Below, piece by piece: positions 38,326-45,421 of a DNA stretch of 64,000 nt. Position 1 is the first letter of the stretch; each line of letters starts with the position of its first letter. Where the stretch lies: the IMG/VR virus record IMGVR_UViG_3300032334_001259, positions 248,001 through 312,000 of that record; one strand, written 5' to 3'. Both the position numbers and the translations under genes were made by a program. A model generated the notes under the pieces. That model was given only the letters and a program-made list of their open reading frames with translations, did no database searches and was not told where the DNA came from.

Positions 38326-38724
38326 TTATTTATTGCGGTCTTTCCAGACTTCATCATTGGCAATGGGTTGCAAAAAATGTATTAGTGCACCTTCCATTGC
38401 ACTTAACTCAGTTTCTTTTTGCAGTGGAATATAATATGTTTTCCAAAATTCAGTAGGATAATTAGAATTTTCCAATAAAGTTTTCCAACCTTCTGGCATG
38501 TAGATATTTTTATTACCAATAGTTTTTTGATAGTGCATATCTTGACGGGTTCTAATATTACCTTTGCCTATATAGACAATATCAGTATTATTATGAACAA
38601 TAATATAAACACCACGCATTTTTTGTCTTGGTATTTTACGCCAATCTAAAAAAGATATTTCTTTTATTTCACAATCAATATTAAAAAAATCAGAGCATTT
38701 TTTTACTGTATCTAATATTTTCAT
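38326..38724 (-). CDS. GIY-YIG nuclease-domain protein
   Basis: GVY...VYIGKG..R.R, E..LI..LQP..N. Confidence 0.75.
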   Translation of the reverse strand: MKILDTVKKCSDFFNIDCEIKEISFLDWRKIPRQKMRGVYIIVHNNTDIVYIGKGNIRTRQDMHYQKTIGNKNIYMPEGWKTLLENSNYPTEFWKTYYIPLQKETELSAMEGALIHFLQPIANDEVWKDRNK

Positions 38725-38738
38725 AAATCACCTGTTAA

Positions 38739-38815
38739 TGGCGATCTCACGTGGACTCGAACCACGACTCTGCCGCTTAGAAGGCGGCCGCTTTGTCCAG
38801 TTAAGCTATGAGACC
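38739..38815 (-). tRNA. tRNA-Arg(UCU)
   Basis: cloverleaf; anticodon arm GCCGC-CTTCTAA-GCGGC; GTTCGAG T-loop; encoded CCA. Confidence 0.95.
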
Positions 38816-39172
38816 ATCTAAATTAAATTCATCTTCCAAATATATTTTATCTACTTTTTGTATAAAGCTATTTGATAATCTTTTTGGTATAATTGTTTTA
38901 CATATTCTTATACTAACATCATGTGTTATTTTGTCAACTGCATTATTATGTCTTTGATCAATTACTAAACATAAAGTTTTACTAGCCTTATATATTTTAC
39001 TAAAAGTTGCCACACGGTTAGTAATGTATTCACTATAACCTACTTGAATTACTCCACCTTTGTAGGGTGTGTCTTGTGATACTTCAAACTCATCAATAAC
39101 TTTTAGATTTGTATCTTGACGAAGTAATTGTGAAATTTTTTCTATATCTTCAACAAGAAATAAAATTTTCAT
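38801..39172 (-). CDS. hypothetical protein (stop codon inside tRNA-Arg)
   Basis: 123-aa ORF coupled to the mtnN-like gene. Confidence 0.65.
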   Translation of the reverse strand: MKILFLVEDIEKISQLLRQDTNLKVIDEFEVSQDTPYKGGVIQVGYSEYITNRVATFSKIYKASKTLCLVIDQRHNNAVDKITHDVSIRICKTIIPKRLSNSFIQKVDKIYLEDEFNLDGLIA

Positions 39173-39702
39173 ACTAATATTTCTAAAAATTTTTCCGCAC
39201 CCTTGTGCATATTTTCTTTCCAGTGTGCACTTGCATCTTCATCTGCAAAATCAGTCATGTATTTGTAGCATTCAAATTGTTTATTAAATCTTTTACATAC
39301 TTTTGCAATAGCATATGCTTCCATATCAACAGCGTCAGTTAATAATTCAGGTTTAGATTTTACAAAGTTATCACCAGTGCTCAATGTGAACACACTATCA
39401 TTCAGAACAATAGGACCACCATCATCTTCAAATGGTGTATAACCTAACTGTGTAAGTGGTCTTGTATCCATATCACGTTGATAAACAGTTCCAATATTGA
39501 TTAACCGTCCAATAATATCTTTATTAAGTGCACCCGCTGTTCCATAGTTTATAATTTTAGAACAATTAGGATCTAATGCACAAATCTTCGTTGCGGCAAT
39601 AGTTGCATTTATTTTTCCAACACCAGTATAAACTATGCTTATACCAAGTGAATCAAACTTAATTGGAAATTCTGGTTCAAGTGCAACTAATATGTAAATC
39701 AT
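39169..39702 (-). CDS. mtnN: MTA/SAH nucleosidase-like (PNP_UDP_1 family)
   Basis: ALEPE, GVGKINA, NYGTAG, TGDNF, DMEAYA and TDFAD motifs. Confidence 0.85.
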   Translation of the reverse strand: MIYILVALEPEFPIKFDSLGISIVYTGVGKINATIAATKICALDPNCSKIINYGTAGALNKDIIGRLINIGTVYQRDMDTRPLTQLGYTPFEDDGGPIVLNDSVFTLSTGDNFVKSKPELLTDAVDMEAYAIAKVCKRFNKQFECYKYMTDFADEDASAHWKENMHKGAEKFLEILV

Positions 39703-39716
39703 AATAAAAAAAATAA

Positions 39717-39802
39717 TGGCGGAGCGTATAGGAATCGAACCTATTCAACCTTTCGGTTGTACACATTAGCAGTGTGCTGCATTACCGGCCTGCCCACGCT
39801 CC
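39717..39802 (-). tRNA. tRNA-Ser(GCU)
   Basis: anticodon arm GCACA-CTGCTAA-TGTGT; long variable arm CAACC-GAAA-GGTTG; G73; CCA. Confidence 0.95.
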
Positions 39803-40497
39803 ATTATTTTACTTATATCATCCTTTTTCCATACTGTCAACTTATTTTTAAACTGTTGCCATTTACAACGGTCTAAATCTGTTTCATAACCCTTAACTTC
39901 TAAATACCCACCCAATTCTTCAACATAAAAGTCTGGAGTATAGTGACTTATTTTACCAGATAAATTTACATAAGCAAATCTTTCAGTGTTTCTTTTCCAA
40001 TTCCAATTTTGGGAATCCATATATTGTGCAGCTTTAAGTTCCCAAGTTCCATCTAACAAAACTTCACCAGCAATAGGACTAATGTATTTTATTTTTTTGC
40101 ATCTACCCGCTTTTGGCATCCATCCAGTTTCATATCTTGATAAAATAATTTCTCTATGCCTGTCTCTAAATTTTTGTTTTTTTTCTTCGCTAAAAGTATG
40201 CCAATTTGTTTTTCCTAAATTTGCATTACGTAATTTTTCTTTTTGAATTATAGCACCTTGCGGTCCAAATATTTCATCGTATGTTTTTCCTTTAAGACTT
40301 GTTCCATTCGATGAACCTTTAGGATGTCCATTTTTCCAATAATTATTGCCTAAATCTTTTCTTAAATTTTTTATTTTTGAACGATTTATTTCTTTCATTC
40401 CATTACAGGAACTTGTAGATTTACAACAACAATTTTTTCCATTTTTTAATTTGTATTTTGCTTCTGTTCCGCAACCATAATCACATAAATCTGTCAT
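39766..40497 (-). CDS. free-standing putative homing endonuclease (PD-(D/E)xK with NUMOD-like N-terminus)
   Basis: CDYGCG/CCC N-terminus, KGKTYDEIFG, YTPDFY...YLEVKG; lies between two tRNAs. Confidence 0.75.
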   Translation of the reverse strand: MTDLCDYGCGTEAKYKLKNGKNCCCKSTSSCNGMKEINRSKIKNLRKDLGNNYWKNGHPKGSSNGTSLKGKTYDEIFGPQGAIIQKEKLRNANLGKTNWHTFSEEKKQKFRDRHREIILSRYETGWMPKAGRCKKIKYISPIAGEVLLDGTWELKAAQYMDSQNWNWKRNTERFAYVNLSGKISHYTPDFYVEELGGYLEVKGYETDLDRCKWQQFKNKLTVWKKDDISKIMERGQAGNAAHC

Positions 40498-40545
40498 ATA
40501 ATTATTTATACAAAATAATTAAAAAGGTGCTTTTAACCTCTAAAT

Positions 40546-40619
40546 TGGTAGGCGATGACAGAATCGAACTGCCGTAGCCGCCGTGTAAAAGCGGAGTTTT
40601 ACCATTAAACTAATCGCCC
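40546..40619 (-). tRNA. tRNA-Val(UAC)
   Basis: anticodon arm CCGCT-TTTACAC-GGCGG; TTCGATT T-loop; CCA; TTGACA promoter upstream. Confidence 0.93.
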
Positions 40620-40640
40620 CAATAGTTTATATATATCATA

Positions 40641-41228
40641 TTATCCAATTTTGTCAACTATTATTTTAAATAATTTTTCTGCCATTATTTCATGTGCAAT
40701 TTCATCAGGATGACCATCAGGCAGTTTATGTGGATATGTTATGCTACACATGTTTTCACTATTAAACCAAATATAATTGTTGTCAATATTTTGACAGTAA
40801 TGGTTAATAGGCATTACATCAAAGAATACATAAGGAACTTTATTGTGATTAAGATATGCAGAAAAAAGTTTTACTTGATTTATGAACTTTTCATAATAAT
40901 ATAATTCATCATAATAATCATGCCAGAATATATTTTCAAACTCTGTTAAACCACGGCGATTTGGAATGGTTGTAAATTTTTTACCAGTTTTATTATCTTT
41001 AAATTCTACACGACTTGGCTGTGTAAATCCGCAGACAACAAAGCTATTATGTAAATCTTTTTCAATTATACTTTGTATAATATGTTCATTACCCATGCCC
41101 TCTCGTGCAAGATTAATGACACTTAAGTTTAATTTTTCAGCCAGCAAATACGGCCAAGAATTAATTGCGTTCTTTAATCCATATCCACTGGTAAAACTAC
41201 AACCACTACATATTAATTTTGAAAACAT
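40641..41228 (-). CDS. SGNH/GDSL-like hydrolase or acyltransferase
   Basis: GCSFT, NLAREGMGN and DGHP...H motifs. Confidence 0.75.
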   Translation of the reverse strand: MFSKLICSGCSFTSGYGLKNAINSWPYLLAEKLNLSVINLAREGMGNEHIIQSIIEKDLHNSFVVCGFTQPSRVEFKDNKTGKKFTTIPNRRGLTEFENIFWHDYYDELYYYEKFINQVKLFSAYLNHNKVPYVFFDVMPINHYCQNIDNNYIWFNSENMCSITYPHKLPDGHPDEIAHEIMAEKLFKIIVDKIG

Positions 41229-42022
41229 TCAACAATCTTTGGTAATATAAGTTGTAACCAATCAATATGTGCATTGTGACCAGGATGATTACCACATTTT
41301 GGATAATCTTTTGCCCATTCGTTAAATGCTGCATCACGATACCAATGAGTCCAGTCTAGATCATATAATCCACTATTGATAATATCATTTGGCTGTGGTT
41401 TAAAAAGTTCGTCACTAGCACTGCAAAAGAAATACGGTATGTTTCTTTGTTTACAAAACATTTCTAGAAACATCATTTCTTTTAATGAATTATAATTATG
41501 ATAGCTGTAATCACCAGTTACTTTATAAAAACTGTCACTTGCATGTACAATTCCAATTTCATTTAATTTATTATGTTGTTCAAGAAAAAATTTTCTTTGT
41601 TTTTCATCTAATCCGTTTGGGAAAAATTCCATCTTTTCATCAAAAGATAAACCATGCCATGCGTTAAAATTTATCCAATAATCGTCAATATCAAAACGTG
41701 CTGCAACAATTGGATTTTTAACTATAGTATTGTATGGGTGCATGTTGCGAATTCGTATTTCACTGCGATGAGTGTATGTCCACATAACCGCAACACATAA
41801 TTCTTTATCTTTATTATCATTAATTGCTTTTATAATACGGCGGCTAATAGTATTATTTGCACCACCTGGTTTAGCAACACAAATATATTCCATATTATAC
41901 TGCCTTGCTAAAAGAGCACTCCAAGTTTGTTGACTTGGAGTGTGTTCTGTGCTACTAAATTTATCATCACCTAGTTCACTTCCCCAAGTGAAACTATCAC
42001 CGCCTGCAATAAGGGTTGGCAT
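41213..42022 (-). CDS. SGNH/GDSL-like hydrolase or acyltransferase
   Basis: GDSFTWG, PGGANN, WT...R and HPG..AH motifs. Confidence 0.75.
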   Translation of the reverse strand: MPTLIAGGDSFTWGSELGDDKFSSTEHTPSQQTWSALLARQYNMEYICVAKPGGANNTISRRIIKAINDNKDKELCVAVMWTYTHRSEIRIRNMHPYNTIVKNPIVAARFDIDDYWINFNAWHGLSFDEKMEFFPNGLDEKQRKFFLEQHNKLNEIGIVHASDSFYKVTGDYSYHNYNSLKEMMFLEMFCKQRNIPYFFCSASDELFKPQPNDIINSGLYDLDWTHWYRDAAFNEWAKDYPKCGNHPGHNAHIDWLQLILPKIVECFQN

Positions 42023-42636
42023 TAGTCACCTAATACTGAACGTGCTTTTTCCCAAAGATGTGTACGTTCTTCAAGACCAATGGTTCCACCATTAATAATC
42101 TTTGTGCACTTTACAATGTCACCAGTATCAGCTACTTCATTGCAACCATTTTGTTGAAAGAACCAACCAGCACTACGTGCTGCACCTTCTGGTGTAGCAA
42201 GATAATCACTGTTTTCTACAAGGTCCATGCCTAATGCTTCACCACATGCAGTGTAGTTATTCTTACCAGTTAACTGAATTAAACCACGACCACGAAAACG
42301 GAAACCATCGCCGCTGTGTTCATCACCATTACCCATACGTGAAGCATAAACACGATTAGCAATCTTTTCTGGTTGCTTTGCAAAATCATTTGGATCTACA
42401 TCACGGAAATATTTTGGAAATATCTTTGTAAGTGTTTCTGCTTTGTAGTTTAAATTTTCACTTACAGCACTGAACATACCACTTTCATGTGCACACTGTG
42501 CAAGAAACATAGCACAACGAGCGGGTGTATTAATTTCAAATTCATGCATTGCTTCATTAAGTGCATCACAATATTTCTCTAAATTCTCACCTTTTGCTTG
42601 TGGAAAAATTTCTTGTAGTTGTTCAAAAGTTGCCAT
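42022..42636 (-). CDS. glycoside hydrolase family 19 endolysin
   Basis: FLAQCAHES, ENLNY, RGRGLIQLTGKNNY and TK.INGG..GL.ER motifs. Confidence 0.92.
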   Translation of the reverse strand: MATFEQLQEIFPQAKGENLEKYCDALNEAMHEFEINTPARCAMFLAQCAHESGMFSAVSENLNYKAETLTKIFPKYFRDVDPNDFAKQPEKIANRVYASRMGNGDEHSGDGFRFRGRGLIQLTGKNNYTACGEALGMDLVENSDYLATPEGAARSAGWFFQQNGCNEVADTGDIVKCTKIINGGTIGLEERTHLWEKARSVLGD

Positions 42637-42700
42637 TTTATATTTCCTTTTTGATTGTTATCAGTATTTACCATTCACCAACCTTCATATAAATATCATT

Positions 42701-43582
42701 ATGTGTGTTATAGTTGCAAAATATTTTGATAATGTAGGTTGGGTTGGTGTAAAAAATCGTGATCGCAACTATGTTCCTGATTTAAGTTTTCGTAAAAAGA
42801 AAAATAAAAATACAGAAGTATTATATTTTTGGGATGATATTACACAATACTGTGAAGGCATGAATGACAGCGGAGTTTGTGTGTTATCTGCAAGCCTTAT
42901 GGTGCTAGATGATGAAAAAGAAATCACTGTTCGCACCAAGACACCAAGCAAAGATGGCGTAAAGATTCAAAAGGCATTGCGACTAACTGATATTAAAGCA
43001 GTAGCAATGAGTTTAATTAAACAAAAGCTACCAGGATGCACAATTATATTTGATCGTGAAACTTGTTATCTACTTGAAGGTGCATGGGCACCTGGTGGAT
43101 ATGAAGATAAAGATTACAAATATAAGATAGAAGAAATACCACATGACGAAACTGTTGCAAGAACTAATCACGGCGTATGGTTAAAGTGGGCAGGATATCA
43201 ATATAGCAGTGATGACAGTGAAACTGCCAGTGCTATAAGCAGTCGCAGTCGTTTAATCATTGCAGAACATATTGCAAAAAATGCTGAAACACCTGCACAA
43301 CTTATTGATTGGTTAACTAAAAAATATGTTGATAACTGGCAATTAAATGCACTACGTCTTACAGATGAAAAGAAAATGATGCGAACAACAGCACAACTTA
43401 TGTTAGTTCCAAAAGAAAATACAATGTTTGTTCGTCCAATTCAAAGTAATATTACTTTTAATTTTTGGAAACTTAATGGTAGTGATAGTAAACTTTGGGT
43501 AGAATTATTAAGTAATCGTGTGCTACGCAGTGGTGAAGATGATCCAAGTATTCCTACTAATTTAGGTCATATCACAGACTAA
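42701..43582 (+). CDS. Ntn-hydrolase-fold protein (N-terminal Cys nucleophile)
   Basis: MC...KNRDR, EGMN..G, RTNHG and S.SR motifs; TAAATA ends 5 nt before the ATG. Confidence 0.65.
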   Translation: MCVIVAKYFDNVGWVGVKNRDRNYVPDLSFRKKKNKNTEVLYFWDDITQYCEGMNDSGVCVLSASLMVLDDEKEITVRTKTPSKDGVKIQKALRLTDIKAVAMSLIKQKLPGCTIIFDRETCYLLEGAWAPGGYEDKDYKYKIEEIPHDETVARTNHGVWLKWAGYQYSSDDSETASAISSRSRLIIAEHIAKNAETPAQLIDWLTKKYVDNWQLNALRLTDEKKMMRTTAQLMLVPKENTMFVRPIQSNITFNFWKLNGSDSKLWVELLSNRVLRSGEDDPSIPTNLGHITD

Positions 43583-43827
43583 ACTGGATGCCACATCATA
43601 CCCCAATCACTATCTACCCAACGTAGGGTAAAGTGAGTTGCATCTTCTGCTTTATCAAATTCAAAAACGACTTGAAATTTTCCTACAAGCGTTCCATCTT
43701 CAAAATATGAAAGTTCTGGATACTTAAAAACATAATTATTTTCAAGACAAAATCGTATCATTTCATCAATCCAATAATCTTTAGCTAAAACATGTTGATG
43801 TGGAATGTGAACTTTTACTTCTGTCAT
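43579..43827 (-). CDS. small protein, same paralogous family as 31.5-32.1 kb
   Basis: FEFDKAEDATHFTLRW. Confidence 0.65.
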   Translation of the reverse strand: MTEVKVHIPHQHVLAKDYWIDEMIRFCLENNYVFKYPELSYFEDGTLVGKFQVVFEFDKAEDATHFTLRWVDSDWGMMWHPV

Positions 43828-43843
43828 TTTAAAACTTTTTAAT

Positions 43844-43920
43844 TGGTGCCCACGGTCGGATTTGAACCGACACTGTGGCGATTTTAAGTCGCCTTTCTCT
43901 ACCTGTTGGAATACGTGGGC
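43844..43920 (-). tRNA. tRNA-Leu(UAA) with short variable loop
   Basis: GGCGA-CTTAAAA-TCGCC; 5-nt variable loop; GTCGG-TTCAAAT-CCGAC; A73; CCA. Confidence 0.92.
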
Positions 43921-43926
43921 ATTAAC

Positions 43927-44343
43927 TTAATCTACCACATCCATAGTGGCTTTACCTAATTCTTTATAACCTTTTGCAGTAGGATGGATTTTATCTTTAC
44001 TCAACCAATCTTTATGTAGTTTAATTGTGCCATCATTAAAATCTCTGGCAAGTGCTTCAATATATTCTATGGTTTCAGCACGAGTATCATTAGGTAGTAT
44101 CCAAATAACATATTGTGCGTCGATACGTTGACGGATCAACCAAAGATTTTCATGTGTGTGCATATCTTTAGAATCATTGGTGCTTAAACTTATAATAACA
44201 ATATTACTTGTCGGAAGTTTTGTGCTGTATGTCCCAAGAAAATCTTGTGAATTGATACCAACTTTAGCAATAGTCATGCAGTCACGACGAACATCACCAA
44301 GACCCTTTGCAATACTGTCACCTATAATCAAACAATCTATCAT
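43927..44343 (-). CDS. SGNH/GDSL hydrolase
   Basis: IIGDSIA, STND and D.IHPT.KGY motifs. Confidence 0.8.
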   Translation of the reverse strand: MIDCLIIGDSIAKGLGDVRRDCMTIAKVGINSQDFLGTYSTKLPTSNIVIISLSTNDSKDMHTHENLWLIRQRIDAQYVIWILPNDTRAETIEYIEALARDFNDGTIKLHKDWLSKDKIHPTAKGYKELGKATMDVVD

Positions 44344-44360
44344 AATACTTCCTTAATTTA

Positions 44361-44436
44361 TGGTAGGCGTGGCCCGACTCGAACGGACACTAGTGCTCTT
44401 ATGAGGAGCAGGTACTAACCATTATACGACACGCCC
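44361..44436 (-). tRNA. tRNA with CAU anticodon (Ile2 or elongator Met)
   Basis: TGCTC-CTCATAA-GAGCA; paired 1-72 and no GGG/CCC, so not an initiator; CCA. Confidence 0.9.
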
Positions 44437-44904
44437 ATGTTTTTTTAACCAAGATTCCCTTAATGCCTTTTTATGTTCTTCACTTTTTGGTTTACCCTTC
44501 AATGCAATTCCACCTTTACGACCATTTTCCTTAAGTTGTTCTGTTGTGAATTTTTTGACATTTTGCCTTCCATTTTCTGCCAATAATTCTTTAGACCAAT
44601 TTGCTGCATCGTAACCTTTTTTTGCATTTTCTTTTGTAAAACCACCAACACCACCAAGTTTCATATTATAGTTGTTTCTATTATAAAAGTCAAGTGTTAA
44701 TTCTTTTTCTTTATTGAACGCTTCATTTTTATTTTCAGTAGTGAAAAGAATTTCTTTTTTAAAATTTTCCTTACCATAATTTTTAATTGCATTTTTAATA
44801 GCAATGCCACTTCCCATATATGAATCATTTACATTTTCAGTTTTATGAACCCCAATATAATATTTTTCATTAATAGTATTAGTTATTTTATATACAATAT
44901 ACAT
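44422..44904 (-). CDS. GIY-YIG homing endonuclease (Seg-like) with NUMOD3
   Basis: IVYKITN...YYIGVH...YMGSG, YNMKLGG and KSEEHK motifs; start revised, GGAG SD. Confidence 0.88.
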   Translation of the reverse strand: MYIVYKITNTINEKYYIGVHKTENVNDSYMGSGIAIKNAIKNYGKENFKKEILFTTENKNEAFNKEKELTLDFYNRNNYNMKLGGVGGFTKENAKKGYDAANWSKELLAENGRQNVKKFTTEQLKENGRKGGIALKGKPKSEEHKKALRESWLKKHGRVV

Positions 44905-44962
44905 ATGAAACTCTCCATATGTATTTATATAGCGGCTGGCTTTACTGTCCATTAACTATATA

Positions 44963-45421
44963 TTAACTTTTTTTGACCGTTTTGTCAACTATATTTTTAT
45001 TTTCTATGAACATTCTATATAATCCAAGTTCACGACCAAATGCTTCAATTTCCCAAGGCATGTCCCAATAATTCATATTTGCTTCTTTATAAACTTGCCC
45101 CTTATACCGACTTACTTTTTTTCTTTCGTTATATGACAATTCACGCTTAACATATTGCTTAACATGAACCATTTCATGTGCAAGAGCAATCAAAATTTTA
45201 CGTTTGCTAAATGAGGAGTCAACAGTAATAGTATATTTTCCACCACCCTCGTTGACACAATATGCTTCGTCACCATGTTTTTTCTGTAGATTGCGTTCAA
45301 AGTCAAGCCATAGGTCAACTTTATTTTTTGTTATATTAAGATAATCGGCGTAGAACGCCACTGCCCTCTTAATAATATCACGGTTAACATTTTTACATTT
45401 ACCAGTAATAGTAAGTTGCAT
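44963..45421 (-). CDS. HExxH metallopeptidase-like protein
   Basis: LAHEMVHVKQY and Y..MPWEIEA motifs. Confidence 0.75.
   Translation of the reverse strand: MQLTITGKCKNVNRDIIKRAVAFYADYLNITKNKVDLWLDFERNLQKKHGDEAYCVNEGGGKYTITVDSSFSKRKILIALAHEMVHVKQYVKRELSYNERKKVSRYKGQVYKEANMNYWDMPWEIEAFGRELGLYRMFIENKNIVDKTVKKS

What the first reader, a model, noticed from the sequence alone, without database searches (positions are those of the whole stretch)
38739..44904. Three ORFs borrow their stop codons from inside downstream tRNA genes
Seen: the PD-(D/E)xK nuclease reads 37 nt into tRNA-Ser and stops at the TAA in its anticodon loop (39766). The GIY-YIG nuclease reads 15 nt into tRNA-CAU and stops at 44422. 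ORF 38801..39172 reads 15 nt into tRNA-Arg. Inference: homing endonucleases inserted flush against tRNA 5' ends. RNase P maturation of the tRNA would cut off the stop codon and leave a non-stop mRNA, so tRNA processing could limit nuclease expression. Another GIY-YIG gene lies directly after tRNA-Arg.
Basis: partly seen in the sequence, partly recalled or inferred. Interest (0 to 1): 0.6.

Follow-up and report, generated by a model that had tools for sequence, protein, structure and literature searches.

The report
Nuclease genes ending inside phage tRNAs
In this uncultured 338-kb phage, two homing-type nuclease genes and one ordinary gene really do run into the next tRNA gene and use a stop codon inside it, but phage T5 shows the same layout and the tRNA-processing idea was proposed for T4 segB in 2008, so this is a good new example, not a new principle.

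Summary
On the minus strand, ORF 38801-39172 stops 15 nt inside tRNA-Arg. The PD-(D/E)xK nuclease (39766-40497) stops 37 nt inside tRNA-Ser, in its anticodon loop. The GIY-YIG nuclease (44422-44904) stops 15 nt inside tRNA(CAU).

It is not chance or an assembly error. About a dozen syntenic IMG/VR phages keep the same junctions. Across 87 ORF-tRNA junctions, 30 of 38 nuclease ORFs end inside the tRNA against 13 of 49 other ORFs.

The nucleases did not simply land next to resident tRNAs. Each nuclease type is linked to its own divergent tRNA allele. Relatives without the nuclease carry a different tRNA at the same site. The nuclease-plus-tRNA module is exchanged between otherwise unlike genomes, as expected for homing with co-conversion.

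The GIY-YIG cassette lies between a conserved sigma-70-like promoter and its tRNA, so its ORF is probably a translated pre-tRNA leader. The third ORF is a conserved native gene, not a nuclease.

RNase P cleavage should therefore remove the stop codons. No RNA data exist to test this. The idea was published for T4 segB in 2008, and T5 hegC and hegD show the same overlap.

Verdict: real, a new member of a known kind, moderate interest.

The parts
44960..44988 (-). sigma-70-like promoter (TTGACA, 17 nt, TAATAT) upstream of the GIY-YIG gene
   Evidence: One search gives 10 of 12 consensus matches. The same TTGACA-17-TATAA(A/T/G) element sits at the orthologous place in every family member. It lies about 10 nt before tRNA(CAU) in nuclease-less alleles and before the nuclease leader in nuclease-bearing alleles. 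Function is inferred, not shown.
44422..44904 (-). SegB-like GIY-YIG nuclease gene (160 aa); its last 4 codons and its TAA lie inside tRNA(CAU)
   Evidence: phrog_314 homing endonuclease, E 1e-35. 53% identical to the T4 SegB catalytic domain, E 7e-26. Absent from L127/L144, L128, L132, L133 and other relatives at the same site.
44361..44436 (-). tRNA(CAU), the allele linked to the GIY-YIG gene
   Evidence: ARAGORN. Rfam 49.0 bits. It is 94-96% identical among the three nuclease-bearing genomes but only 51-58% identical to the tRNA(CAU) at the same site in genomes without the GIY-YIG gene.
43927..44343 (-). GDSL-like hydrolase gene with its own stop 6 nt before tRNA-Leu; serves as an in-window control
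43844..43920 (-). tRNA-Leu(UAA), not overlapped by any ORF
40546..40619 (-). tRNA-Val(UAC), directly upstream of the PD-(D/E)xK cassette
   Evidence: In nuclease-less relatives it is followed after 3-12 nt by tRNA-Ser.
40498..40545 (-). 48-nt leader of the nuclease cassette, conserved in all PD-(D/E)xK-bearing alleles; it replaces the 11-nt spacer of empty alleles
39766..40497 (-). PD-(D/E)xK nuclease gene of the T7 endonuclease I type with an N-terminal Cys-rich module (243 aa); its last 12 codons and its TAA lie inside tRNA-Ser
   Evidence: phrog_15137, E 3e-14. Motif PDFY...EVKG. PDB 1m0d, E 1e-5. dN/dS 0.07-0.15 against relatives. Presence/absence polymorphism.
39717..39802 (-). tRNA-Ser(GCU), the allele linked to the PD-(D/E)xK gene
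   Evidence: 13 of 22 pairs show compensatory changes among nuclease-linked alleles. 72-82% identical within the linked class but 48-62% to other classes.
39169..39702 (-). MTA/SAH-nucleosidase-like gene, an insertion present in only some family members
   Evidence: PF01048, E 4.5e-15. NF004168, E 1.8e-27. Present in the window, L133 and L142 only.
38801..39172 (-). ORF123, a native gene of unknown function; its last 4 codons and its TAA lie inside tRNA-Arg
   Evidence: 38-52% identical homologues between tRNA-Ser and tRNA-Arg in all family genomes. Their stop lies 10 nt inside tRNA-Arg in 8 genomes and 1-3 nt before it in 3. No family hit.
38739..38815 (-). tRNA-Arg(UCU)
   Evidence: 64.5 bits.
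38326..38724 (-). Small GIY-YIG-fold gene starting 14 nt after tRNA-Arg; an insertion unique to this genome
   Evidence: Pfam GIY-YIG E 0.004, below cut-off. Structural neighbours are Eco29kI and UvrC GIY-YIG domains. Absent from all 11 relatives.

Best explanation
The region is a compact tRNA operon of a jumbo phage in which protein genes sit directly between tRNAs.

Two of the three overlapping ORFs are free-standing homing-type nucleases. One is a SegB-like GIY-YIG enzyme. The other is a PD-(D/E)xK enzyme of the T7 endonuclease I type. Each is physically fused to its own tRNA allele.

The unit 'leader + nuclease ORF + tRNA' behaves as one mobile cassette. Most likely it spreads by homing: the nuclease cuts the nuclease-less tRNA locus, and repair copies in the nuclease together with its own, presumably uncut, tRNA allele. 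The phage keeps a working isoacceptor either way.

The ORFs have no stop of their own because the tRNA supplies one. Conserved tRNA positions read as stop codons: U8-A9-G10, N13-A14-R15, the D-loop, and U36/A37/A38 of the anticodon loop.

The GIY-YIG cassette lies between the tRNA's promoter and the tRNA, so the nuclease mRNA is the translated 5' leader of the tRNA precursor. RNase P cleavage at tRNA nt 1 would therefore remove the last 4-12 codons and the stop codon, leaving a stop-less mRNA.

What is shown: the geometry, its conservation, the nuclease-tRNA linkage and the module exchange. What is inferred: the homing mechanism, co-transcription, the RNase P consequence, and any dosage-limiting role.

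The third ORF (ORF123) is a native gene that shares the same tight packing.
For: - Geometry.
- The same junctions in relatives.
- Empty alleles have tRNA-Val, an 11-nt spacer, then tRNA-Ser. Filled alleles carry a 743-nt or a 473-nt insert at that spot.
- Two other nuclease types occupy the same two sites, each with its own tRNA allele and each ending inside the tRNA. One is PDDEXK_5 (PF11645, E 1e-10). The other is a second phrog_15137 enzyme.
- Linkage: nuclease-linked tRNA(CAU) alleles are 94-96% identical to each other and 51-58% to alleles lacking the GIY-YIG gene. tRNA-Ser shows 72-82% against 48-62%.
- Module exchange: L143 and L144 have 67-75% identical backgrounds but 96/98/100% identical tRNA-Val/nuclease/tRNA-Ser. 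L144 and L145 have 90-99% identical backgrounds but 59% identical tRNAs and differ in nuclease presence.
- The nuclease is functional: dN/dS 0.07-0.15.
- The overlapped stretch evolves as RNA. Compensatory anticodon-stem changes dictate the tail residues H, V or A.
- tRNAs stop incoming frames at 10, 15, 22-23 and 37-39 nt.
- Enrichment: 30 of 38 nuclease junctions overlap against 13 of 49 others, Fisher p 1.3e-6.
- The promoter is kept upstream of the cassette.
- Precedents: SegB recognises tRNA T-arm DNA and drives inheritance of the tRNA region. T5 hegC and hegD overlap tRNAs.
Against: - No cleavage assay, no transcript ends and no protein data exist. No RNA run was listed.
- The junction sample was fetched through homology to the GIY-YIG protein and its members are related, so the p-value overstates independence.
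- Non-nuclease ORFs also end inside tRNAs: the ORF123 family, a deoxyribonucleotidase and a 2OG oxygenase.
- Eight nuclease junctions keep their own stop 0-37 nt upstream. T4 segB has its own stop 5 nt before tRNA-Arg. The overlap is therefore not obligatory.
- Nuclease alleles differ by dS 0.7-1.0. Much of the linkage could reflect long vertical co-inheritance plus general recombination, not active homing.
Confidence: 0.72

Rival explanations
1. Selected dosage control. The stop is kept inside the tRNA so that RNase P maturation turns the nuclease mRNA into a non-stop message. Trans-translation then tags and removes the product, which holds a potentially toxic nuclease at a low level and ties its level to tRNA processing.
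For: - The stop codons lie 15-37 nt beyond the RNase P site.
- The cassette sits between the promoter and the tRNA.
- Nuclease ORFs borrow tRNA stops far more often than other tRNA-adjacent ORFs, 79% against 27%.
- All eight close GIY-YIG relatives lack a stop of their own although the frame and overlap length vary between 10, 15, 22 and 38 nt.
- The phage carries an alpha-type tmRNA, Rfam 108 bits.
- The same idea was proposed for T4 segB and the T5 F-Tfl nucleases.
Against: - There is no RNA or protein evidence.
- Native non-nuclease genes show the same overlap.
- Some homologous nucleases keep their own stop.
- The linker between the last conserved residue and the tRNA is only about 5-8 codons. 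By my own estimate from base composition, absence of a stop there is expected by chance about 60% of the time at this GC content.
- The phage has no SmpB, and tmRNA genes are common in large phages whatever their nuclease content.
Confidence: 0.3
2. Neutral by-product of genome compaction. ORFs in this phage are packed against tRNA 5' ends. When an ORF lacks or loses its own stop, the tRNA ends it within a few codons at no cost. On this view the overlap has no function and no special link to nucleases beyond their frequent residence in tRNA arrays.
For: - ORF-to-tRNA distances in this genome cluster around zero. The overlaps are 37, 15, 15 and 2 nt, one ORF ends flush, and the gaps are 2, 5, 6 and 21 nt.
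- ORF123 homologues vary from 3 nt before the tRNA to 15 nt inside it among relatives.
- The tails encoded by the tRNA are not conserved as protein.
- tRNAs stop most incoming frames within the tRNA body.
Against: - The odds ratio of about 10 for nucleases against other tRNA-adjacent ORFs.
- Convergence of four nuclease families on the same geometry.
- The same pattern in the unrelated phage T5.
Confidence: 0.4
3. Artefact. On this view the tRNAs are mis-called, or sequencing or assembly errors hide earlier stops.
For: Rfam failed to report the tRNA(CAU) in four longer searches.
Against: - The same tRNA scores 49.0 bits when searched alone.
- All five tRNAs exceed the gathering score.
- An identical second contig exists, and at least six diverged relatives keep the open frames and overlaps.
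- dN/dS is 0.07-0.15.
Confidence: 0.02

Closest known systems
Phage T5 hegC and hegD (HNH homing endonucleases in the T5 tRNA region, NC_005859)
   Same: The nuclease CDS reads into the next tRNA on the same strand and stops there. hegD stops at a TAA 23 nt inside tRNA-Gln(CUG). hegC stops at a TAG 14 nt inside tRNA-Ser(GGA). The setting is also a tRNA array interspersed with nuclease genes.
   Different: The T5 enzymes are HNH nucleases; here they are GIY-YIG and PD-(D/E)xK.
Phage T4 SegB (GIY-YIG homing endonuclease in the T4 tRNA cluster; PMC2330249, PMC13096335)
   Same: The catalytic domain is 53% identical to the window's GIY-YIG. segB lies immediately upstream of a tRNA and is co-transcribed with the tRNAs. 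Its authors proposed that tRNA maturation cuts the mRNA at its stop codon and lowers expression. SegB recognises tRNA T-arm DNA and drives preferential inheritance of the tRNA region. SegB homologues are enriched near tRNAs.
   Different: T4 segB has its own TAA 5 nt before tRNA-Arg; here the stop lies 15-37 nt inside the tRNA. The window protein is shorter (160 aa against 221) and has a different C-terminal region.
tRNA punctuation of animal mitochondrial transcripts with incomplete stop codons
   Same: mRNAs are bounded by tRNAs and released by tRNA processing, and the coding sequence abuts or overlaps the tRNA.
   Different: In mitochondria, polyadenylation completes a U or UA into UAA. Here the cleaved ends would be ...CAU...GAU and ...AU, and adding A residues creates no stop (read). 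Bacteria deal with such ends by tmRNA rescue.
I-Ssp6803I, a PD-(D/E)xK homing endonuclease in the tRNA-fMet intron of Synechocystis (from my own knowledge, not checked here)
   Same: A PD-(D/E)xK-fold homing enzyme associated with a CAU tRNA gene.
   Different: It is encoded inside a group I intron within the tRNA. The genes here are free-standing and upstream of the tRNA, and no sequence relationship was tested.

Membership tests
Free-standing homing endonuclease gene (Seg-like) | Recognisable nuclease catalytic domain | tested here: met
   GIY-YIG gene: phrog_314, E 1e-35, and 53% identity to the SegB catalytic domain. Its Pfam SegE_GIY-YIG score of 21.3 bits is below the 25-bit cut-off. PD-(D/E)xK gene: catalytic motif and T7 endonuclease I profile hit, E 1e-5.
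Free-standing homing endonuclease gene (Seg-like) | Present or absent at the same locus among close relatives | tested here: met
   GIY-YIG is present in the window, L131 and L145 and absent in L132, L133, L138, L142, L144 and others. PD-(D/E)xK is present in the window, L138, L143 and L144 and absent in L132-L134, L136, L141, L142 and L145.
Free-standing homing endonuclease gene (Seg-like) | Co-conversion, seen as mosaic flanks around the nuclease gene | tested here: met
   Sharp identity breaks fall at the cassette borders. The downstream tRNA allele travels with the nuclease.
Free-standing homing endonuclease gene (Seg-like) | Site-specific cleavage of the nuclease-less allele and biased inheritance in crosses | not testable with these tools
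   This needs purified protein and mixed infections.
PD-(D/E)xK nuclease, T7 endonuclease I branch | D...(D/E)xK catalytic motif in a conserved core | tested here: met
   D189, E200 and K202 are invariant in alignment A4.
PD-(D/E)xK nuclease, T7 endonuclease I branch | Pfam Phage_endo_I (PF05367) at the gathering score | tested here: not met
   The window protein has no Pfam hit. The 26%-identical L136 homologue scores 21.6 bits against a 29.1-bit cut-off. The relationship rests on a PDB profile hit, E 1e-5, over 62 residues.
tRNA gene (Rfam RF00005) | Full-length covariance-model match above 29 bits and a cloverleaf fold | tested here: met
   Arg 64.5, Val 62.0, Leu 57.3, Ser 45.6 bits. CAU 49.0 bits. 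ARAGORN cloverleaves. Compensatory pairs.
T5-type nuclease ORF ending inside a tRNA | The nuclease's stop codon lies inside the next same-strand tRNA | tested here: met
   Overlaps of 15 and 37 nt here. Overlaps of 14 and 23 nt in T5.
Gene limited by non-stop mRNA and tmRNA | mRNA 3' ends at the RNase P site, and a tmRNA-tagged or unstable product | not testable with these tools
   No RNA run was listed. The phage has a tmRNA but no SmpB.
Mitochondrial-type incomplete stop codon | A stop codon completed by adding A residues after tRNA excision | tested here: not met
   The ends would be CAU, GAU and AU, and adding A residues gives no in-frame stop.

The most novel reading that the evidence does not exclude
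Placing the stop codon inside the tRNA could be a selected and widespread rule. On this reading, nuclease genes of at least four families (GIY-YIG, endonuclease I-like PD-(D/E)xK, PDDEXK_5, HNH) live as translated 5' leaders of phage pre-tRNAs. Each RNase P cut that makes a tRNA would also make a stop-less nuclease message. That would give a built-in limiter that lets the selfish nuclease-plus-tRNA cassette spread without harming the phage.
Probability: 0.25. Interest if true: 0.65.

Novelty: new member of a known kind. Interest (0 to 1): 0.42.

Why it matters
Phage tRNA arrays are now seen as counter-defence loci, and SegB-type nucleases as drivers of their turnover (PMC13096335). This family adds three things.

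- It offers natural filled and empty alleles, with four nuclease types at two tRNA sites. These show that the nuclease and its downstream tRNA move as one fused unit and replace the resident tRNA. That can explain the strong mosaicism of phage tRNA genes.
- It gives a clean, testable setting for the old and still untested proposal that tRNA processing throttles nuclease expression.
- It has a practical lesson for annotation. Pipelines that forbid CDS-tRNA overlap will truncate or miss these genes. Rfam speed filters can also miss genuine phage tRNAs.

Tried and rejected
- RNA evidence: none was listed for the 6.7-kb region.
- Idea that nuclease-linked tRNAs are non-canonical 'immune' alleles. 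It arose because Rfam missed the linked tRNA(CAU). I rejected it. The tRNA scores 49.0 bits when searched alone, against 51.4 bits for the nuclease-less allele. In 20 further loci the nuclease-linked tRNAs show no clear score shift (the list was cut at 150 rows, so this check is only rough).
- Idea that the linked tRNA lacks the SegB T-arm motif GGTTCRANTCC. This holds for the window allele (CGTTCGAGTCG) but not for the L044, L046 and L049 alleles. There is no general rule.
- Relatives of the nucleosidase-like gene (60% identical) carry no nearby tRNAs and are not syntenic, so they were uninformative.
- DNA-level search of cultured phages found only short Seg-like matches. A protein search found SegH/SegD-like genes at about 40% identity with no tRNA listed under the match.
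- ORF123 function: nothing from Pfam, PHROGs, NCBIfam or the ESM Atlas.
- The promoter scan of the region as a whole is not above shuffles, 46 against 38.6 +/- 4.9. Only the promoter conserved across relatives is used in the argument.
- Phage SmpB: none found.
- Completion of a stop codon by polyadenylation: excluded by the sequence.

Full report
**Context.** The window is bases 248001-312000 of a 338,435-bp IMG/VR phage record with direct terminal repeats and 35.5% GC. The genome has 23 tRNA genes in two main clusters. It also has an alphaproteobacterial-type permuted tmRNA.

All features are on the minus strand.
- ORF 38801-39172 ends with TAA at tRNA-Arg(UCU) nt 13-15.
- ORF 39766-40497 ends with TAA formed by the last anticodon base plus A37 and A38 of tRNA-Ser(GCU), 37 nt into the tRNA.
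- The GIY-YIG ORF (start 44904) ends with TAA at nt 13-15 of tRNA(CAU).
- The other two tRNAs in the window are preceded by ORFs with their own stops, 6 and 21 nt upstream.
- All five tRNAs pass the Rfam model. The tRNA(CAU) was missed in four longer searches but scores 49.0 bits when searched alone, so the misses were filter artefacts.

**What the ORFs are.**
- The 243-aa protein carries an invariant PD...ExK motif (D189, E200, K202). A profile of it matches T7 endonuclease I structures at E 1e-5. It belongs to phrog_15137 'endonuclease'. Its dN/dS against relatives is 0.07-0.15, so it is a working gene.
- The 160-aa protein is 53% identical to the T4 SegB catalytic domain and matches phrog_314 at E 1e-35.
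- ORF123 has no family assignment.
- The small gene after tRNA-Arg (38326-38724) has a GIY-YIG fold.

**Relatives.** IMG/VR holds about a dozen syntenic genomes, with endolysin 74-83% identical. They provide natural filled and empty alleles.
- Between tRNA-Val and tRNA-Ser, empty alleles have a 3-12-nt spacer, mostly ttcttatatac.
- Four genomes carry the 743-nt PD-(D/E)xK insert, with its stop 37 nt inside tRNA-Ser.
- Two genomes carry a 473-nt insert encoding a PDDEXK_5 nuclease (PF11645, E 1e-10). Its TGA ends 5 nt inside tRNA-Ser.
- Before tRNA(CAU), empty alleles have a 72-74-aa ORF that stops 11-14 nt upstream of the tRNA.
- Three genomes carry the GIY-YIG gene there, overlapping the tRNA by 15, 15 and 22 nt.
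- One genome carries a second phrog_15137 nuclease there, overlapping by 9 nt.
- In the genome's other tRNA cluster, an HNH gene overlaps tRNA-Arg(UCG) by 2 nt.

**The nuclease and its tRNA are one unit.** Each nuclease type is linked to its own tRNA allele class.
- GIY-linked tRNA(CAU) alleles are 94-96% identical to each other but 51-58% identical to the alleles lacking the GIY-YIG gene at the same site.
- PD-(D/E)xK-linked tRNA-Ser alleles are 72-82% identical to each other but 48-62% to the rest.
- The upstream tRNA-Val does not track nuclease presence.
- L144 and L145 have 90-99% identical backgrounds. They differ reciprocally in which nuclease they carry and have 59% identical tRNAs. The breakpoints fall within a few nucleotides of the cassette ends.
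- L143 and L144 have 67-75% identical backgrounds but 96/98/100% identical tRNA-Val/nuclease/tRNA-Ser.

This is the pattern expected from homing with co-conversion. It arrived with its own tRNA and replaced the resident one.

**The overlapped segment evolves as RNA.** Among linked tRNA-Ser alleles, 13 of 22 pairs show compensatory changes. Three of these lie in the anticodon stem that forms the ORF tail. They change the penultimate residue among H, V and A. The conserved protein core ends just before the tRNA.

**Why the tRNA supplies a stop.** I examined 309 tRNAs.
- In the frame whose codon starts 2 nt before the tRNA, half have TAG at nt 8-10.
- In the frame that starts at nt 1, 31% have a stop at nt 13-15.
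- In the third frame, the stops cluster at nt 23 and 38.

The overlap lengths seen for nucleases (10, 15, 22 and 37-38 nt) match these positions.

**Specificity.** I collected 87 non-redundant junctions where an ORF of at least 80 aa ends within -40 to +70 nt of a same-strand tRNA 5' end. Of these, 30 of 38 nuclease ORFs end inside the tRNA against 13 of 49 other ORFs (Fisher p 1.3e-6).
- Caveat: the loci were fetched through GIY-YIG homology and are not independent.
- Non-nuclease genes can overlap too. In the 11 relatives that include tRNA-Arg, the ORF123 homologue stops 10 nt inside it in 8 and 1-3 nt before it in 3; the window's own overlap is 15 nt.

**Transcription.** A TTGACA-17-TATAA(A/T/G) element lies about 10 nt before tRNA(CAU) in empty alleles. 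It is retained upstream of the nuclease leader in filled alleles, including the window (44988-44960). By inference, the GIY-YIG ORF is the translated 5' leader of the tRNA precursor. The PD-(D/E)xK ORF lies between two tRNAs of one array. RNase P cleavage would then leave ends of ...CAU...GAU and ...AU with no stop, and adding A residues does not create one. No RNA run was listed, so this step stays inferred.

**Comparison with what is known.**
- In T5, hegD ends 23 nt inside tRNA-Gln(CUG) and hegC ends 14 nt inside tRNA-Ser(GGA).
- In T4, segB ends 5 nt before tRNA-Arg. Its authors proposed in 2008 that tRNA maturation cuts the mRNA at the stop codon and lowers expression, and they said the same had been proposed for the T5 F-Tfl nucleases.
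- SegB recognises the tRNA T-arm motif and drives preferential inheritance of the tRNA region.
- A 2026 paper shows that SegB homologues are enriched near tRNAs. It does not contain the terms 'overlap', 'stop codon' or 'RNase P'.

The geometry and the regulatory idea are therefore both known. What this locus adds:
- allele-level proof of a fused nuclease-tRNA cassette;
- use of the same sites by several nuclease families;
- a rough quantitative excess of overlaps among nucleases.

**Verdict.** The feature is real and conserved. It is best read as mobile nuclease-tRNA cassettes plus one tightly packed native gene. It is a new member of a known kind. Whether the borrowed stop is a selected expression limiter or a tolerated by-product of compaction remains open.

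Noticed in passing
L144:4941-5070 and L145:5657-5786 (relatives, at the locus where other family members carry tRNA-Leu(UAA)): A tRNA-Leu(UAA) otherwise identical to the L141 allele is interrupted in its anticodon loop by an insert of about 50 nt. The insert has terminal inverted repeats CGGAGA/TCTCCG and an internal T-arm-like GGTTCAAATCC. It is far too short for a group I intron. Rfam still scores the interrupted gene at 40.9 bits. Unexplained.
   Followed up: partly
Own genome G000:C1:377-709, minus strand (outside the window; L180): The phage encodes an alphaproteobacterial-type permuted tmRNA (RF01849, 108 bits) with tag ANDNAPVEMRLAA, but no SmpB. This suggests an alphaproteobacterial host. 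tmRNA genes also sit in or near nuclease-rich tRNA arrays in L072, L079, L008 and L021.
   Followed up: partly
window 44361-44436: Rfam cmscan missed this genuine tRNA(CAU) in 301-nt, 11-kb, 51-kb and whole-genome searches. It scored 49.0 bits when only 96 nt were searched. A second ARAGORN tRNA(CAU) at genome position 100070-100146 is also absent from the whole-genome list.
   Followed up: yes
window 38326-38724: A single-domain GIY-YIG-fold gene is inserted 14 nt after tRNA-Arg. It is unique to this genome among 12 family members. It is probably another mobile nuclease, located downstream of a tRNA, not upstream.
   Followed up: partly
window 39169-39702: An MTA/SAH-nucleosidase-like gene lies between tRNA-Ser and ORF123. 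It is present in only 3 of 12 family genomes. Its stop overlaps the ORF123 start (ATGA).
   Followed up: partly
L144:5138-5761 compared with window 40200-40497: An HNH endonuclease in relatives shares its N-terminal Cys-rich module (C-DY-CG...KYKLKNGKNCC) with the window's PD-(D/E)xK nuclease. This points to domain shuffling between nuclease families.
   Followed up: partly
L132, L133, L134, L136, L141, L142: spacer between tRNA-Val and tRNA-Ser: The 11-nt spacer ttcttatatac is almost invariant in empty alleles, although the flanking tRNA-Val and tRNA-Ser alleles are only 57-75% identical. It could be a processing signal or part of a nuclease target.
   Followed up: no
Own genome 96.6-104.5 kb (L179): The second tRNA cluster has ORFs ending flush with tRNA 5' ends or 2 and 5 nt before them. 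An HNH gene overlaps tRNA-Arg(UCG) by 2 nt. A 110-aa ORF that spans the whole of tRNA-Cys is probably spurious.
   Followed up: partly
T5 NC_005859 34006-34524 (L181): The hypothetical protein T5.069 overlaps tRNA-Asn by 24 nt, and T5.057 overlaps tRNA-Met by 6 nt. CDS-tRNA overlap in T5 is therefore not limited to the annotated heg genes.
   Followed up: no
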